Shown here piece after piece: positions 2,557 to 51,002 of a stretch of 64,000 bases of DNA. Each line of letters begins with the position of its first letter. Position 1 is the first letter of the stretch. Both the position numbers and the translations under genes were made by a program. Where the stretch lies: positions 1,364,001 through 1,428,000 of the forward strand of contig OZ251229.1 of NCBI GenBank assembly GCA_965240325.2, in the 5' to 3' direction. The DNA comes from Rebecca billardiae RCC1528. Its lineage: Eukaryota > Protista > Haptophyta. The notes under the pieces were generated by a model, which was not told where the DNA came from, did not search any database, and worked only from the letters and a program-made list of their open reading frames with translations.

Positions 2557-4113
2557 ATGTGGGCCGAGCCCAACCCCTGGCGGGAGGGCCCAGACGTGGC
2601 GGAGGTGGAGTTGAAGGGCTTCAGCACGGAGTATGCAGACCATGGCGTCATCGTGCCGGCACCCCGTGGCTTCGAGGTTGCGGAACTTGTGGTCACGGAC
2701 GCCATCTACACTTTGCCTGCGAGGCAGACCAGTGCAGAGCCAAAGCTCGTGCGCAATATCGGGGATGCCAGCATGCAGCGCATCGTCCACGCGAGCGGCA
2801 CGGCCTTCCTCCTTCGCGCAGAATCCATGCTATTGAATGACGACAGCAACGAGCCCGGCCAAGTCACTGTCTCACCCCTCTCGTCCACGCCCCCTCCCTC
2901 TGGCGACGGCGTGTTCAACCTGTTTGAGCTGCTCGGCTACCCTCAGGGCAACGCGCGCACCTTGCTCGACGAGGAGGGCCTCCGATTTGCGATCGAAATG
3001 CGGGGGGAGGCGGTGAGGGAGGAGGCTGAACGTGGATTCCGCCGGCCCATTTGCGTATCCGCCTTGGCCGCGATGGATGCGTCTCGCGCGCCCGAGCACG
3101 CGCGCGGCCCGCTCCCAGCCTCTCTCGTGCTGCTCTGCACGCAGGACTACCACGTGAGCCTCCTGCGGCTCGGCAACGCGCACATTGGCTCCCCGGTGGT
3201 CCCGTGCCTTGCATCTGCGCCCGTGCCAAATGCCGCGGCGCGTGTGGATCTGCTGTCACATGTCGAGCTGGCCCTCTCTCCGGATGTGCTGCAGCTGGTG
3301 CTCGCCGAGTCGCACCACCACGCCCACGAGGGAGGGCTGGGCAGTCGCGGGATGCAACTCGTGTGCGGAGACGACGGCAGGCTGCTCGCTGCGCTTGGCC
3401 TCAGCTGCGGCGAGGTCATCTTCCTCGACATGACGCCGCCGCTACCGCCCACGGCCCCGGGCGCGAGCCCCACGGCCGCCCCGCCGCTGTGCGCCACGCA
3501 GTCGCCCGCGCCACCCCGCCTCGTGCGGCGGGTGCGGGCGCACGGCATGCCTGTCCGAGGCGTTGACCTGGGCGCGTCAAACGCATTCGTCGCGCACCTC
3601 GTCTGGCACCCGCCGACTGGCTGCCTCGTGTCCGGCGGCGGCGACAGCCGGGTGAGCGTCACTGCGGTCGCTGGCTGGTCGGCTGCCAGTGCGGATCGCG
3701 GCCCCGACGCAGGGGCGGTGGCCGCGGTGCCTGTGGAGGCGCCAGCGCACACGTGGGTGGCATCCGACGGCTGGGGCGCGCCGCTCAACTACAAGGTAAC
3801 CAACGTGGCGGTGGCGGAGGCTGCGCGCGTGGCGGCCACCGCGAGCCAGCTGGACGGCGGGCACGTCATGCTGTGGGAGCTGCCCGCGGGCCGCCGCCTC
3901 TGCCGCCTCGAGCCCGCGCGCGGCATCTACTGCCAACCGCATGTGGACTGGATTACGCGCTTCCGCGTGCACGGGCTCGCGCTCACTGCAGATGGGAGCA
4001 GGGTGGTGATCGTGCACGCCAACGGGGGCATGAACGACGACGAGCCCCTGCAGGTGGAGGCGGCCATCCCGGCGCAGCTTCTTGAGGGACTCCGGACGAC
4101 CTCGGAGGCCTGA
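2557..4113 (+). CDS. WD40-like beta-propeller protein (start uncertain)
   Basis: Long ORF with coding-like composition. WD-like segments include AH...V..LVWHP.TGCLVSGGGDSRV and AATASQLDGGHVMLWE. Confidence 0.65.
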   Translation: MWAEPNPWREGPDVAEVELKGFSTEYADHGVIVPAPRGFEVAELVVTDAIYTLPARQTSAEPKLVRNIGDASMQRIVHASGTAFLLRAESMLLNDDSNEPGQVTVSPLSSTPPPSGDGVFNLFELLGYPQGNARTLLDEEGLRFAIEMRGEAVREEAERGFRRPICVSALAAMDASRAPEHARGPLPASLVLLCTQDYHVSLLRLGNAHIGSPVVPCLASAPVPNAAARVDLLSHVELALSPDVLQLVLAESHHHAHEGGLGSRGMQLVCGDDGRLLAALGLSCGEVIFLDMTPPLPPTAPGASPTAAPPLCATQSPAPPRLVRRVRAHGMPVRGVDLGASNAFVAHLVWHPPTGCLVSGGGDSRVSVTAVAGWSAASADRGPDAGAVAAVPVEAPAHTWVASDGWGAPLNYKVTNVAVAEAARVAATASQLDGGHVMLWELPAGRRLCRLEPARGIYCQPHVDWITRFRVHGLALTADGSRVVIVHANGGMNDDEPLQVEAAIPAQLLEGLRTTSEA

Positions 4114-27317: not shown

Positions 27318-30551
<3,234 letters not shown>

Positions 30552-30882
30552 GCTGCCGGGGCGCTCGCGCGGCCGGGCGGCTCCGGAAGCTGCTCCGATG
30601 CGTCCGAGCGCCGATCGATCGATTCTGAGGGCTGTATATATATATGGCTCGTGACGACTGTGTTGTGTGGTGCATTATGACGATACAGCTGCTACTGCAC
30701 ATGATCACGAAGCAGCTCGCGAGCCACACTAGTTCTATATATATATACTATATACTGCTGACTCAGTCTCATCATCATCATCGCGATCTACAGGAGACGG
30801 AGTGCTGTGCACAGTGGCGTCGGCTGCATGCAGCATGGCCATGTCGACTTTTGTCGTTACTGACAGTCATCATCACCCGTAG

Positions 30883-48059: not shown

Positions 48060-48905
48060 TCATGATGCGCGCTGGAGCCAGGTGCTGTACGCGGCGCCAA
48101 GGCCGAGGGCGAACACGTGGGCGATCACCACGCCGGCACTGGGGCCTCCGTTCTCGGCGACAGCGAGCACGGCCTGGAGCAGGCATGCCCACGGGGCGGC
48201 GAGCTGGACGCCGTACACGTTGAAGATGAGCGCTGGCTCACGGACTGCCGTCGCTGCCACCCAGCTCAGACGAGCCGCGGTCGATGAGACGCGCGCCGCG
48301 CCACGGTCATCAAAGATGCGTGTGGCGACCCAGTGCGCCAGCACACCCGAGCCGACAAAGAGGGAGAGTGCGCCCGCGACGGTGGCCGGCGCCCGCTGCA
48401 CGACGCTGGAGCAGGAGAGGAACGTCAGCACGGAGACGACGAGGCCCATCAGCGTCGTCTGAGCGAATGGCGCGAGCAGAAAGCTCGGTAGCCTCGCGTA
48501 GCCCGTGTGCGGCGGGATGAAGAATCGGAACGCGAGTCCGGGCGCGGTGCTGAACGCGAGGAAGGAGAGCGAGGAGGTGACGACGAAGACGATCGCTGAG
48601 AGCTCGGCGCGGGGCCAACGCACCCACGTGGCGAGGAGCCCGATGTGCGTCACCTCGGGCCGCTTCGAGTGCCACCGCACTGTGAGGAAGAAGGCATCTG
48701 ACACGCCTCGCAGCGCATCGGCACGCGAGTCGAGCGGGCGCACGGGCTGCTGCAGGTGGTCCTTGAGCCGACGAGGCCAGTCGCTGAAGGTGTGCTTCGT
48801 CGAGAGTGTCTCCGCTCCCGGACGGGTCTGGTGCATGATCCCCAACGCCACCGCCACCGCCGCCCACACCCATGCGCTCGACTCGTCGCCGTGTCGTCTC
48901 GCCAT
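48060..48905 (-). CDS. Multi-pass membrane protein of unknown function
   Basis: 281-aa ORF with several hydrophobic helices, divergent from the SPX-PRS gene. Confidence 0.6.
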   Translation of the reverse strand: MARRHGDESSAWVWAAVAVALGIMHQTRPGAETLSTKHTFSDWPRRLKDHLQQPVRPLDSRADALRGVSDAFFLTVRWHSKRPEVTHIGLLATWVRWPRAELSAIVFVVTSSLSFLAFSTAPGLAFRFFIPPHTGYARLPSFLLAPFAQTTLMGLVVSVLTFLSCSSVVQRAPATVAGALSLFVGSGVLAHWVATRIFDDRGAARVSSTAARLSWVAATAVREPALIFNVYGVQLAAPWACLLQAVLAVAENGGPSAGVVIAHVFALGLGAAYSTWLQRAS

Positions 48906-49084
48906 CGTGCCGAAGAGCACGCGATATTCGCGCGTGTTGTTTTTCAAAAAATACTGTCTTACGTGGCCAGCATTTTCTTTCGTCAGCGTGCGTGGGTCCC
49001 GGACGGTCTCGGTCTCGTCAGGCCACGGCTCACCGCGCGGGCGCCGACGACGCTGGGTCGCGTGGACGTCAGCTGTCAGCCGCG

Positions 49085-51002
49085 ATGTCGACGGCGCACG
49101 CAGGGATGGACCCCCCGGCCAACCGTCTGAAGCCGACGGACAGCATGCGCACCTCGTACGCGCGCGCCGAGGGCCTCGACAAGTTCGCCAAGGAGCTGCA
49201 GTCGTACGTGCAGCCCGGGTGGGAGGATGGGTACATTGACTACCTCAAGCTCAAGATGATCCTGAAGGAGCACGGCGGCGACAAGCTGGACGACGGGCAG
49301 CGCGCGAACTTGGACAAGGACGCGCTCGACGCCGAGTTCTTTCCCGTCCTCGAGGCCGAGCTCGACAAGGTCAACGAGGCGTTCGTGCAGAAGTGCGATC
49401 GGTTCGAGGCAGTCGTGCATGGGTACAAGCCGCTCGGGCCGTCAGAGACGAAGAGCATCTCCGACGTGGAGTCGGAGGGCGGCGGGCAGCCCGCGCCGCC
49501 CATCGGCGCAGACGACTTCTGGACCGCCTTCAAGGACCTCGGCAAGATGACCACGTACGTGTGGATCAACCGGCAGGGCTTCTTCAAGATCATGAAGAAG
49601 TACGACAAGGTGTGCGGCCTGCTCGGCACAGGGCGTGAGCTGGGGCCGGAGTTCGAGCGGCGGCTGGACCACGAGGTGTTCACGGGCCCGCGGCTCGAGA
49701 CGCTCATCGAGCTGTACAAGAACAAGAAGCCACCGAGCACCAGTGCGCGCGCGCGCGCCCGACGGCGCCGCGCGCGCGGGCGGCGCCGCGCGCGCGGGCG
49801 GCGCGCCCCGGCCGCCCCACGCGCCTGCCTGCCTCACACCGCGCGCCGGCCGGCGGCGTCGTGCGCTGCGCGCGTGCCGCGCGCAGGCCACGGCTTCACG
49901 CCCGAGATGAAGCTGGTCGCGGGCACGGCGAACCCCGAGCTCGCGCAGGAGATCTCCGCGCGGCTGGGCGTGCCGTTGATGCCGGTCAAGATTGGCAACT
50001 TCAACGACGGCGAGGTCGCGATCCAGCTCCTCGAGAACGTGCGCAACTCGGAGGTGTACATCATCCAGCCGACGTCCACGCCGGTCAACGACAACCTGAT
50101 GCAGCTGCTGCTGCTCGTGAGCGCGTGCCGCCGCGCGTCGGCCGCGCGGGTCATCGCCATTGTGCCGTACTACGGGTACGCGCGGCAAGACCGCAAGGAG
50201 CGCTCGCGCGTGCCCATCTCGGCGGCGGACGTCGCCCGGTTGATGGAGGCGATGGGGGTGGACCGGGTGTGCTGCGTCGACCTGCACTGCGGCCAGATCC
50301 AGGGCTTCTTCGGCCCGCGCACGCCAGTGGACAACCTGTGGGCTTCGACCATCGCGCTGCACTACTTCAAGAGCAAGGTCGAGCAAGGCTCCGTCGTCGT
50401 CGTCTCGCCCGACGCAGGCGGCGTCGCGCGCGCCAAGCTGTTCAAGGACGGCTTGGACGCGGTCGGGCTCAAGCCCGCGCTCGCTGTGATCATCAAGCAG
50501 CGGGTGAAGGCGGGCGAGGTGGGGCAGACCGACCTGGTGGGCTCGGTGGAGAACTGCGACGCGATCATCGTCGACGACATGATCGACACGGCGGGCACCC
50601 TCTGCGCCGCTGCCAACGAGCTCAAGCAGTTTGGCGCCAAGCGCGTGTTCGCGTTCGCCACGCACGGCCTCTTCAACAACCCGGCGGCGGAGCGGATCGA
50701 GAAGAGCGCGCTTGAGGAGGTGGTGACGGCCAACACGATCCCGCTGCGCGACGAGGTGGTGATGACCACCAAGAAGATCCGGCAGGTGCGGCGCGCGGGG
50801 GCGGCCGCGCCCGCCCCCAGTGCGCAGCCACGCGCGCGCGCAGCCGTCACCTGAGTGCCCGCCGTGCGCGCGCTCCGTGCACGGCGCTGCGCAGCTGTCC
50901 GTCGGCAAGCTGCTCGCCGAGGCCATGCTCTCGATACACACGGGGAAGAGCGTCTCGCAGCTGTTTGACTTGCAGAAAGCGCTCGAGCGCGTGTCCGGCT
51001 GA
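49085..51002 (+). CDS. SPX domain-ribose-phosphate pyrophosphokinase (PRPP synthetase) fusion, ~554 aa; exons 49085-49742, 49887-50785, 50895-51002
   Basis: SPX motifs: KFAKEL...W..GYIDYLKLK, FF..L..ELDKVN.AF, IN..GF.KIMKKYDK. PRS motifs: FNDGE, PYYGYARQDRK, DLHCGQIQGFF, VSPDAGG, VDDMIDTAGT, ATHGLF, SVSQLF. Confidence 0.92.

What the first reader, a model, noticed from the sequence alone, without database searches (positions are those of the whole stretch)
49085..51002. SPX phosphate-sensor domain fused to a class I PRPP synthetase
Seen: one reading frame joins an SPX domain to a complete PRS enzyme. The SPX part keeps the ligand-binding residues (KFAK; the Tyr/Lys of YIDYLKLK; the lysine cluster KIMKKYDK). 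The 144-bp intron between the domains is in frame and stop-free, so the fusion does not depend on my splice call. Known: SPX domains bind inositol pyrophosphates and control Pi homeostasis. Their familiar partners are EXS, MFS, RING, VTC, ANK-GDPD and SLC13-type transporters. Class I PRS needs Pi and is inhibited by ADP; its C-terminal SVSxLF segment is retained here. Inference: this may be a direct PP-InsP switch on PRPP supply, linking phosphate status to nucleotide, His/Trp and NAD synthesis in an alga. I do not know of a description of this architecture but cannot confirm novelty without a search.
Basis: partly seen in the sequence, partly recalled or inferred. Interest (0 to 1): 0.92.

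Follow-up and report, generated by a model that had tools for sequence, protein, structure and literature searches.

The report
SPX phosphate sensor fused to PRPP synthetase
A haptophyte alga carries one real gene that joins a phosphate-signal sensor (SPX domain) to the enzyme that makes PRPP, the sugar-phosphate building block of nucleotides. The gene is shared by haptophytes and pelagophytes, and a similar fusion was already described in trypanosomes, so it is interesting but not new in kind.

Summary
Window 49085-51002 (+) is a three-exon gene for a 554-aa protein: a disordered N-terminal tail (aa 1-31), an SPX domain (aa 32-215), a short linker and a complete class I PRPP synthetase (aa 227-554).

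- **Splice calls:** both hold. An MMETSP transcript ORF from a related alga aligns at 89.5% identity with no gaps. Two other pavlovophyte genomes have the linker intron at the same position and phase.
- **Conserved residues:** all SPX ligand-binding residues and all PRS catalytic and allosteric motifs are present.
- **Distribution:** the fusion occurs across haptophytes (Emiliania, Gephyrocapsa, Prymnesium, Chrysochromulina, Scyphosphaera, Pavlovales) and in the pelagophyte Aureococcus. The PRS domains of these fusions form one strongly supported clade.
- **Novelty:** the claim does not hold at the architecture level. An SPX-PRPP synthetase (TcPRPS4) was pulled down on 5-IP7 beads in Trypanosoma cruzi and published in 2020/2021, although it was said to be unique to kinetoplastids. 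The algal orthologues sit in public databases, unremarked.
- **Function:** control of PRPP supply by inositol pyrophosphate is plausible but untested for any member. Whether the algal and kinetoplastid fusions share an origin could not be resolved.

Verdict: new member of a known kind, moderate interest.

The parts
49085..49177 (+). Start codon and N-terminal extension (aa 1-31) ahead of the SPX domain
   Evidence: K33 aligns to K2 of solved SPX domains. The extension is conserved among pavlovophytes (SY[AV]RAEGLD) but absent from prymnesiophyte and pelagophyte members, which start MKF. AF2 gives pLDDT below 50 for residues 1-29 of orthologue P0001. It has no hydrophobic signal-peptide-like stretch (read from the sequence).
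49178..49729 (+). SPX domain (aa 32-215), with phosphate-binding cluster Y53, K57, K172 and lysine surface cluster K168, K171, K175
   Evidence: Pfam SPX scores 54.3 bits against a cut-off of 27.8. phmmer matches solved SPX domains of C. thermophilum Gde1/Vtc4, yeast Vtc3/Vtc4, XPR1 and OsSPX1. In an AF2 model of this window sequence (pLDDT 80), the 50 best PDB Foldseek matches are all SPX domains, with TM up to 0.73. Ligand residues were mapped to ScVtc4 Y22/K26/K133 and K129/K132/K136 as defined in PMC9911596.
49730..49742 (+). End of exon 1: start of the SPX-PRS linker (PPST + first base of S220)
   Evidence: Sequence and splice reconstruction.
49743..49886 (+). Intron 1: GT..AG, 144 nt, phase 1, CG-repeat rich, in frame and free of stops
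   Evidence: Absent from all orthologous proteins and transcripts. Same position and phase in D. lutheri (96 nt) and Pavlovales sp. CCMP2436 (173 nt).
49887..50785 (+). Exon 2: linker end and class I PRPP synthetase (aa 220-519). Contains FNDGE, YARQDRKERSRVPISA, DLHCGQIQGFF, SPDAGG, catalytic loop K423-Q-R425 (50495-50503) and ribose-5-P loop DDMIDTAGT (50573-50599)
   Evidence: Pribosyltran_N 160.9 bits, Pribosyl_synth 72.7 and Pribosyltran 45.2. NCBIfam NF002320 scores 352 bits against a cut-off of 297, and TIGR01251 scores 313 against 113. It scores 278 bits against E. coli PRS 6asv/4s2u and 245 bits against human PRPS1.
50786..50894 (+). Intron 2: GT..AG, 109 nt, phase 0
   Evidence: Orthologues continue ...KIRQ|LSVGK... 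across this point. D. lutheri has an intron at the same place.
50895..51002 (+). Exon 3: C-terminal PRS helix with SVSQLF (50949-50966) and stop codon TGA (51000-51002)
   Evidence: alignment to orthologues.
48060..48947 (-). Divergently oriented upstream neighbour (295-aa ORF). It bounds the 5' end of the gene and leaves about 137 bp of shared intergenic DNA
   Evidence: The same neighbour lies head-to-head with the SPX-PRS gene in D. lutheri and Pavlovales sp. CCMP2436 (tblastx: 51% over 151 aa and 52% over 103 aa). It has no Pfam family.

Best explanation
This is one expressed gene of a pavlovophyte haptophyte. It encodes a probably cytosolic 554-aa enzyme in which an N-terminal SPX domain is joined by a linker of about 12 residues to a complete, probably active, class I ribose-phosphate diphosphokinase (PRPP synthetase). 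It belongs to an SPX-PRS family that was inherited vertically within haptophytes and is also present in pelagophytes and in uncultured marine eukaryotes.

The most likely mechanism is inferred, not shown. The basic surface of the SPX domain (K33, Y53, K57, K168, K171, K172, K175) binds inositol pyrophosphates (5-InsP7 / InsP8), whose level reports cellular phosphate and ATP sufficiency. Ligand binding changes how the SPX domain packs against the PRS body or its oligomer. As a result, PRPP synthesis is allowed when phosphorus is plentiful and throttled when PP-InsP levels fall. This would add a signal-level control on top of the enzyme's own Pi activation and ADP inhibition, and would tie nucleotide, NAD, His and Trp synthesis to phosphate status.

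The direction of control (activation by ligand) is the less certain part.
For: Shown here:
- Both domains pass curated family thresholds.
- The SPX fold is confirmed on the window's own sequence.
- All six PBC/KSC residues plus K2 and F3 are invariant in pavlovophytes and nearly so across 19 fusion sequences (residue definitions from PMC9911596).
- The PRS catalytic and allosteric motifs are intact.
- The fusion is read as one ORF in MMETSP transcripts marked 'complete'.
- A single 1995-nt contig of a run guessed to be RNA, from a more distant relative, carries both domains.
- The spliced protein matches P0001 at 89.5% identity with no gap.
- Intron positions are conserved in three genomes.
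- In the PRS tree, 33 SPX-bearing rows lie on one side of a 100/99 branch, with pavlovophytes sister to prymnesiophytes. This indicates long retention of the fusion under selection.
- The AF2 full-length model of orthologue P0001 has pLDDT 89 and pTM 0.83. It superposes over both domains on an independent AFDB model at TM 0.75/0.81, which suggests a fixed inter-domain arrangement.

From the literature:
- SPX domains are PP-InsP receptors (PMC9911596; bioRxiv 10.1101/2019.12.13.875393).
- The kinetoplastid SPX-PRPS TcPRPS4 was enriched on a 5-IP7 affinity reagent (bioRxiv 10.1101/2020.01.09.900860).

Context, unchecked:
- Notes on the same genome report VTC4, SPX-MFS and SPX-RING genes and an inositol polyphosphate kinase.
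Against: - No binding, activity or expression data exist for any algal member.
- The T. cruzi paper shows only a pull-down, with no effect on enzyme activity.
- No RNA from the window's own organism could be examined.
- The SPX domain does not start at residue 1 as in most SPX proteins. A 31-aa extension precedes it in pavlovophytes, and this could alter the ligand site, to which the N-terminus normally contributes.
- Many prymnesiophyte members have lost the catalytic-loop lysine. In part of the family the PRS body may therefore be regulatory rather than catalytic, so activity here is not guaranteed.
- Neither the sign of regulation nor compatibility of an N-terminal SPX with the PRS hexamer could be assessed, because only monomer models were available.
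Confidence: 0.6

Rival explanations
1. The PRS body is a non-catalytic or weakly catalytic regulatory subunit, comparable to the animal PRPS-associated proteins. It would co-assemble with a separate canonical PRS and bring PP-InsP sensing to a hetero-oligomer.
For: Within the same clade, many prymnesiophyte members replace the catalytic-loop Lys by Q, T or P, and some alter the ribose-5-P loop (DTART, DTANT). One divergent member (L001/P0039) has lost most catalytic motifs while keeping an SPX domain.
Against: The window protein and all pavlovophyte orthologues keep every motif examined, including K423-Q-R425, DDMIDTAGT, DLHCGQIQGFF and FNDGE. The window protein also clears the NCBIfam PRS cut-off. 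The PRS part is 87-94% identical among pavlovophytes, as expected of a working enzyme.
Confidence: 0.12
2. The SPX domain is not a PP-InsP receptor here. It might sense another phosphorylated ligand (Pi itself, or PRPP as product feedback). Alternatively it might act mainly as a protein-interaction module, for example by docking a transcription factor, as stand-alone plant SPX proteins do.
For: The N-terminal extension departs from the usual free SPX N-terminus. A family-specific conserved block follows the lysine helix, L-x-G-T-G-x-E-L-x-P-x-F-E-x-R-L, with no assigned role. SPX crystal structures also hold sulfate or Pi at the same site (5ijh).
Against: The full PBC + KSC signature that defines PP-InsP binding is invariant. 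The only experimentally examined SPX-PRPS was captured on 5-IP7. In studied SPX proteins, affinity for Pi is far weaker than for PP-InsPs (general knowledge of the family, not tested here).
Confidence: 0.15
3. The fusion is an artefact: two adjacent genes (a stand-alone SPX protein and a PRS) that merely share a frame across GC-rich, stop-poor spacer DNA.
For: In DNA with 68-72% GC, long stop-free frames are common. ORFs of over 100 aa occur in other frames and on the opposite strand over this region. No RNA of this organism was available.
Against: Full-length single ORFs come from independent transcriptomes (MMETSP 'complete' ORFs P0001, P0006, P0181, P0235). Dozens of 1.7-2.1-kb environmental transcript-like contigs carry both domains. 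The canonical GT..AG intron is at a conserved position and phase. Exon 2 has no start codon context: the PRS part begins directly at its first beta-strand. The architecture is conserved across two haptophyte classes and pelagophytes.
Confidence: 0.02

Closest known systems
TcPRPS4, the SPX-domain PRPP synthetase of Trypanosoma cruzi and other kinetoplastids (Mantilla et al., bioRxiv 10.1101/2020.01.09.900860; Mol Microbiol 2021, doi 10.1111/mmi.14672)
   Same: An N-terminal SPX domain is followed by a PRS body, and the proposed role is 5-IP7/PP-InsP control of PRPP and nucleotide synthesis. The ESM Atlas feature search ranks a Euglenozoa cluster carrying SPX + Pribosyltran_N + Pribosyl_synth as the nearest cluster (score 0.92).
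   Different: According to the paper, TcPRPS4 has an extra 85-aa C-terminal region and a PRS body only about 33% identical to the other T. cruzi PRPP synthetases. The window protein ends 11 residues after SVSQLF, and its PRS body scores 278 bits against E. coli PRS. A probable kinetoplastid AFDB entry (A0A7G2CEE2; organism recalled from memory, not shown by the tool) aligns at only 17% identity. Common origin versus convergence was not resolved. The paper's statement that the fusion is unique to Kinetoplastida is contradicted.
Class I PRPP synthetases (E. coli Prs 4s2u/6asv, B. subtilis 1dkr, human PRPS1 2h06)
   Same: The PRS body aligns end to end with them, and the flag region, regulatory flexible loop, catalytic flexible loop, PPi and ribose-5-P loops and the C-terminal SVSxLF allosteric segment are all kept.
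   Different: The window protein carries a 220-residue N-terminal addition (tail + SPX + linker). It also has a two-residue insertion, GFF-GP-RTPVDNL, shared with its nearest non-fused eukaryotic relatives.
Vtc4 (SPX fused to the TTM polyphosphate polymerase) and Gde1 (SPX-ankyrin-GDPD)
   Same: An SPX domain is fused directly to a soluble catalytic domain of phosphate metabolism. In VTC, PP-InsP binding to the SPX domain activates the enzyme (PMC9911596). Their SPX structures are among the best sequence and fold matches.
   Different: The catalytic partner is different. Those proteins handle phosphate storage or scavenging, whereas PRS commits phosphate and ATP to biosynthesis. No membrane-complex context is evident here.
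PRPS-associated proteins (PRPSAP1/2; 2ji4)
   Same: They are PRS-fold proteins that regulate PRS complexes. This is a relevant analogy for the prymnesiophyte members that lack the catalytic lysine.
   Different: The window protein keeps its catalytic residues and matches 2ji4 much less well (156 bits against 245-278 for active enzymes). PRPSAPs have no SPX domain.

Membership tests
SPX domain (Pfam PF03105) | Profile match above the curated threshold | tested here: met
   54.3 bits against a cut-off of 27.8, E = 2.9e-14; phmmer matches solved SPX domains down to E = 2.5e-7.
SPX domain (Pfam PF03105) | Helical SPX fold: N-terminal helical hairpin plus long helix bundle | tested here: met
   The AF2 model of window 49085-49741 has pLDDT 80 and helices at aa 22-40, 53-63, 78-113, 142-176, 187-194 and 203-213. 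The 50 best PDB Foldseek matches are all SPX domains, with TM by target up to 0.73.
SPX domain (Pfam PF03105) | Phosphate-binding cluster (ScVtc4 Y22, K26, K133) and lysine surface cluster (K129, K132, K136) | tested here: met
   Y53, K57, K172 and K168, K171, K175 are present. They are invariant in all pavlovophyte orthologues and nearly so across the family. Residue definitions come from PMC9911596.
SPX domain (Pfam PF03105) | Domain begins at the protein's first residues (MKF...); typical rather than strictly defining | tested here: not met
   A 31-aa extension precedes D32-K33-F34 in the window and in all pavlovophyte orthologues. Prymnesiophyte and pelagophyte members do start MKF.
SPX domain (Pfam PF03105) | Binding of InsP6 / PP-InsPs | not testable with these tools
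   Needs ITC or a similar assay with recombinant protein.
Class I ribose-phosphate diphosphokinase (EC 2.7.6.1) | Profile matches above curated thresholds over both PRT-like domains | tested here: met
   Pribosyltran_N 160.9, Pribosyl_synth 72.7 and Pribosyltran 45.2 bits. NF002320 scores 352.1 against 297, and TIGR01251 scores 312.9 against 113.
Class I ribose-phosphate diphosphokinase (EC 2.7.6.1) | Catalytic residues: flexible-loop Lys/Arg, His of DLHxxQIQGFF, ribose-5-P loop DDxxDTxGT, PPi loop SPDxGG, flag region FxDGE | tested here: met
   K423-Q-R425, DLHCGQIQGFF, DDMIDTAGT, SPDAGG and FNDGE are all present. The roles of these motifs are taken from established PRS enzymology (my own knowledge).
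Class I ribose-phosphate diphosphokinase (EC 2.7.6.1) | Allosteric Pi/ADP site elements: regulatory flexible loop and C-terminal SVSxLF | tested here: met
   YARQDRKERSRVPISA and SVSQLF are present and conserved in the clade.
Class I ribose-phosphate diphosphokinase (EC 2.7.6.1) | Pi dependence, ADP inhibition, hexameric assembly | not testable with these tools
   Only monomer models were possible; an enzyme assay and SEC-MALS or EM are needed.
Kinetoplastid PRPS4 (SPX-PRPS of Mantilla et al.) | N-terminal SPX domain followed by a PRS body | tested here: met
   paper text.
Kinetoplastid PRPS4 (SPX-PRPS of Mantilla et al.) | Extra C-terminal region of about 85 aa without homology to other PRS | tested here: not met
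   The window protein ends at aa 554, 11 residues after SVSQLF.
Kinetoplastid PRPS4 (SPX-PRPS of Mantilla et al.) | Orthology: PRS and SPX domains group with kinetoplastid PRPS4 in trees | not tested
   No kinetoplastid sequence could be obtained. The only indirect figure is 17% identity in a Foldseek alignment to AFDB entry A0A7G2CEE2.
   Careful IQ-TREE run: 35 rows (33 with SPX) on one side of a branch with support 100/99. The window is sister to P0001 (100/97), inside pavlovophytes (92/100), which are sister to prymnesiophytes (82/95).
   Same codon and phase in the window (144 nt), D. lutheri (96 nt) and Pavlovales sp. CCMP2436 (173 nt).

The most novel reading that the evidence does not exclude
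The algal SPX-PRS family arose independently of the kinetoplastid PRPS4, so SPX was fused to PRPP synthetase at least twice. This would imply strong, recurrent selection for direct inositol-pyrophosphate control of nucleotide precursor supply. Within haptophytes the family then split into catalytic sensors (pavlovophytes, including this gene) and lysine-less, PRPSAP-like sensor subunits (many prymnesiophytes, including Emiliania). If so, a major group of ocean phytoplankton would have a post-translational, signal-driven brake on phosphorus spending for nucleic acids.
Probability: 0.3. Interest if true: 0.65.

Novelty: new member of a known kind. Interest (0 to 1): 0.45.

Why it matters
PRPP synthesis is the entry point for purine, pyrimidine, NAD, His and Trp synthesis. 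By my own recollection (not checked here), nucleic acids are among the largest phosphorus pools in phytoplankton cells. A sensor domain wired directly onto this enzyme would be a post-translational link between phosphate status and growth in haptophytes and pelagophytes, groups that dominate many phosphorus-poor ocean regions and form blooms.

The session also corrects the published statement that SPX-PRPS is restricted to kinetoplastids. It supplies a set of well-behaved members with canonical enzymes, which may be easier to study biochemically than the very divergent trypanosome protein.

No SPX-PRS has yet been shown to respond to PP-InsPs, so the central question remains open and is directly testable.

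Tried and rejected
- **Prokaryotic genome scan:** a scan of genome contigs with the SPX part found nothing, as expected for a eukaryotic domain.
- **RNA of the window's organism:** none was listed. The second search listed only runs holding about 6% of sampled words, which means relatives.
- **Laying relatives' contigs on the window:** this showed one contig spanning both domains in a run guessed to be RNA. The sequences were too divergent to show a clean splice joint on this DNA.
- **Kinetoplastid PRPS4 sequences for a joint tree:** word-based protein searches with three different SPX regions never reached them. The Atlas and AFDB tools give no usable sequences.
- **Regulated intron-1 retention adding an Arg-rich linker:** rejected. 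The insert is absent from all transcripts, and the homologous intron is out of frame in CCMP2436.
- **Upstream ATG at 48872 as the true start:** rejected. Orthologues start at or after the position of 49085, and the divergent neighbour occupies 48060-48947.
- **Plastid targeting:** judged unlikely, because the N-terminus is hydrophilic and is predicted disordered in orthologue P0001.
- **Literature searches by locus tag or accession:** no papers found. A phytoplankton SPX survey (PMC8233357) and a bloom-alga transcriptome paper (PMC5513979) do not mention the fusion. A 2026 pan-domain PRPS preprint (PMC13252144) has no occurrence of 'SPX' or 'fusion'.
Full report
**1. What is in the sequence**

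A single frame on the + strand is open from 48872 to 50854. Translated from the ATG at 49085, it gives Pfam matches to:
- SPX: 54.3 bits against a cut-off of 27.8.
- Pribosyltran_N: 160.9 bits.
- Pribosyl_synth: 72.7 bits.
- Pribosyltran: 45.2 bits.

The gene model is as follows:

| Feature | Coordinates | Notes |
|---|---|---|
| Exon 1 | 49085-49742 | start codon, N-terminal tail, SPX domain |
| Intron 1 | 49743-49886 | GT..AG, 144 nt, phase 1 |
| Exon 2 | 49887-50785 | linker end, most of PRS |
| Intron 2 | 50786-50894 | GT..AG, 109 nt |
| Exon 3 | 50895-51002 | C-terminal PRS helix and stop |

The spliced CDS is 1665 nt and encodes 554 aa.

**2. Is the fusion real?**

A protein search with the SPX part returned six full-length proteins with the same four Pfam domains. 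They include two MMETSP transcript ORFs marked 'complete' and the gene models of Diacronema lutheri (KFE25_010554) and Pavlovales sp. CCMP2436.
- None of them contains the 48 residues encoded by intron 1, and all continue ...KIRQ|LSVGK... across intron 2.
- The spliced window protein and the MMETSP ORF P0001 are both 554 aa. They align at 89.5% identity without a single gap.
- In the D. lutheri and CCMP2436 genomes, an intron interrupts the same linker codon in the same phase (96 nt and 173 nt).
- The 173-nt length shows that the in-frame, stop-free state in the window is a coincidence, not a conserved read-through option.
- No RNA run from the window's own organism was listed. In a run guessed to be RNA from a more distant relative, one 1995-nt contig covers both the SPX and PRS parts.
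- The upstream divergent neighbour (48060-48947, minus strand) is conserved head-to-head with the gene in all three pavlovophyte genomes. This fixes the 5' boundary.

The two-gene reading is therefore very unlikely.

**3. The SPX domain**

phmmer matches solved SPX domains (C. thermophilum, yeast Vtc3/Vtc4, XPR1, OsSPX1), with K33 aligned to K2 of those domains.

An AF2 model of the window's own residues 1-219 has pLDDT 80, and its 50 best PDB matches are all SPX domains.

The residue sets are defined for yeast Vtc4 in PMC9911596: PBC is Y22, K26, K133 and KSC is K129, K132, K136. The window equivalents are Y53, K57, K172 and K168, K171, K175. They are invariant in pavlovophytes and nearly so in 19 fusion sequences from all lineages.

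Two features are unusual:
- A 31-aa N-terminal extension, found only in pavlovophytes. Residues 1-29 of orthologue P0001 are predicted to be disordered.
- A family-specific conserved block after the lysine helix (L-x-G-T-G-x-E-L-x-P-x-F-E-x-R-L).

**4. The PRS body**

It scores 278 bits against E. coli PRS and 245 bits against human PRPS1. It clears the NCBIfam thresholds.

It keeps every motif examined:
- FNDGE.
- YARQDRKERSRVPISA.
- DLHCGQIQGFF.
- SPDAGG.
- The catalytic loop K423-Q-R425.
- DDMIDTAGT.
- SVSQLF.

The roles of these motifs come from established PRS enzymology (my own knowledge, not tested here). The protein therefore looks like an active class I enzyme with its Pi/ADP allosteric site.

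**5. Distribution and history**

An exhaustive HMMER search of 1.84 billion representatives, two further word-based searches and cluster look-ups show the fusion in the following groups:
- Emiliania huxleyi (EMIHUDRAFT_462667).
- Gephyrocapsa oceanica.
- Scyphosphaera apsteinii.
- Prymnesium parvum (KAL1518998.1).
- Chrysochromulina parva.
- Pavlova sp. CCMP459.
- Aureococcus anophagefferens (KAK7235699.1).
- Several unnamed groups from marine metatranscriptomes.

A careful IQ-TREE analysis of PRS domains (72 rows) gave these results:
- All 33 SPX-bearing rows, plus two identical N-terminally short Chrysoreinhardia rows, lie on one side of a branch with support 100/99.
- Pavlovophytes (92/100) are sister to prymnesiophytes (100/97).

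This pattern fits one fusion event that was then inherited vertically in haptophytes. The nearest non-fused PRS share a two-residue insertion (GFF-GP-R) with the clade.

**6. Structure**

The full-length AF2 model of P0001 has pLDDT 89 and pTM 0.83. The best AFDB cluster match is a 507-aa protein that aligns over residues 33-552 at 55% identity, with TM 0.75/0.81. Two independent predictions therefore give a similar relative placement of the two domains, which is consistent with allosteric coupling through a short linker. No oligomer model could be made.

**7. Prior knowledge**

A full-text search found one description of this architecture. Mantilla et al. captured a T. cruzi ribose-phosphate pyrophosphokinase on a 5-IP7 affinity reagent and noted its N-terminal SPX domain. 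They named it TcPRPS4 and stated that it is unique to Kinetoplastida. The published version is cited in PMC9286782.

The paper reports no enzymatic effect of 5-IP7.

The ESM Atlas also holds a Euglenozoa cluster with SPX + PRS domains.

No paper mentioning the algal fusion was found. This includes surveys of phytoplankton SPX genes and a 2026 pan-domain PRPS analysis.

Compared with TcPRPS4, the window protein lacks the 85-aa C-terminal region, and its PRS body is far less divergent. A probable kinetoplastid AFDB entry aligns at only 17% identity. Whether the two fusions share an origin could not be tested, because no kinetoplastid sequence could be obtained.

**8. Mechanism and verdict**

Shown:
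- A real, conserved, single-chain SPX-PRS.
- An intact PP-InsP-binding signature.
- Intact PRS catalytic and allosteric motifs.

Inferred:
- PP-InsP binding to the SPX domain modulates PRPP synthesis.
- The most likely direction is that synthesis is permitted when phosphorus is plentiful.

The main rivals are a PRPSAP-like regulatory role and a different ligand or partner for the SPX domain. The first is suggested by lysine-less prymnesiophyte members, but the window protein's intact motifs argue against it.

The finding is a new member, and a new lineage, of a kind already described.

Unchecked notes from the same genome mention VTC4, SPX-MFS, SPX-RING-Zn2Cys6 and an inositol polyphosphate kinase fusion. 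If correct, this gene sits within a broad SPX/PP-InsP system.

Noticed in passing
window 48060-48947 (-); L002 3105-3914; L003 about 3255-3582: A 295-aa ORF lies head-to-head with the SPX-PRS gene and is conserved in that position in D. lutheri and Pavlovales sp. CCMP2436 (about 51% identity). It has no Pfam family. The ESM Atlas feature search points to rhomboid intramembrane proteases (score 0.90, 157 shared features), which is only a lead. This may be a conserved bidirectional promoter pair.
   Followed up: partly
proteins P0181, P0192/P0212, P0203/P0209, P0235/P0237 and relatives: Many prymnesiophyte SPX-PRS members replace the catalytic flexible-loop lysine (K423 in the window protein). 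It becomes Q in Scyphosphaera and Prymnesium, T in Emiliania/Gephyrocapsa and P in the Chrysochromulina type, and some also change the ribose-5-P loop. The SPX ligand residues were checked, and found kept, in other members of the family only. These may be PRPSAP-like sensor subunits rather than enzymes.
   Followed up: partly
L001 150-1769 (Logan ERR6349571; P0039 extended upstream): This is a very divergent SPX-PRS-like protein of 540 aa with degenerate catalytic motifs (YSRQAGS, DLHSDSIRGVS, no C-terminal SVSxLF) but a recognisable SPX domain. The gene caller had cut off the first 41 residues, including the MKFGSDLK start of the SPX domain. It is probably a pseudoenzyme.
   Followed up: partly
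window 27640-30560 compared with L002 19-2972: A CDC48-like AAA ATPase gene sits directly beside the conserved neighbour gene in D. lutheri. In the window it lies about 17.5 kb further from the SPX-PRS locus. The window has therefore gained DNA or been rearranged between 30.6 and 48.0 kb.
   Followed up: no
window 49749-49818 (inside intron 1): The CG-repeat-rich intron attracts short matches (35-47 nt) from many unrelated contigs in all four runs laid. This is a low-complexity GC-rich motif shared widely in these genomes. Apparent depth there is not evidence of expression.
   Followed up: no
proteins P0035, P0155, P0117; AFDB F0GZJ6: Other N-terminal fusions to PRS turned up among the best PRS hits: nucleotidyltransferase (GlmU/IspD-like)-PRS and MeaB GTPase-PRS. 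PRS therefore accepts N-terminal partners in several lineages.
   Followed up: no
proteins P0022/P0177 (Chrysoreinhardia, MMETSP1166): These are pelagophyte PRS of 345-346 aa that fall inside the SPX-PRS clade but have no SPX domain and degenerate motifs (YSRQTHR; catalytic loop shortened). They are either 5'-truncated transcripts or a secondary loss of SPX.
   Followed up: no
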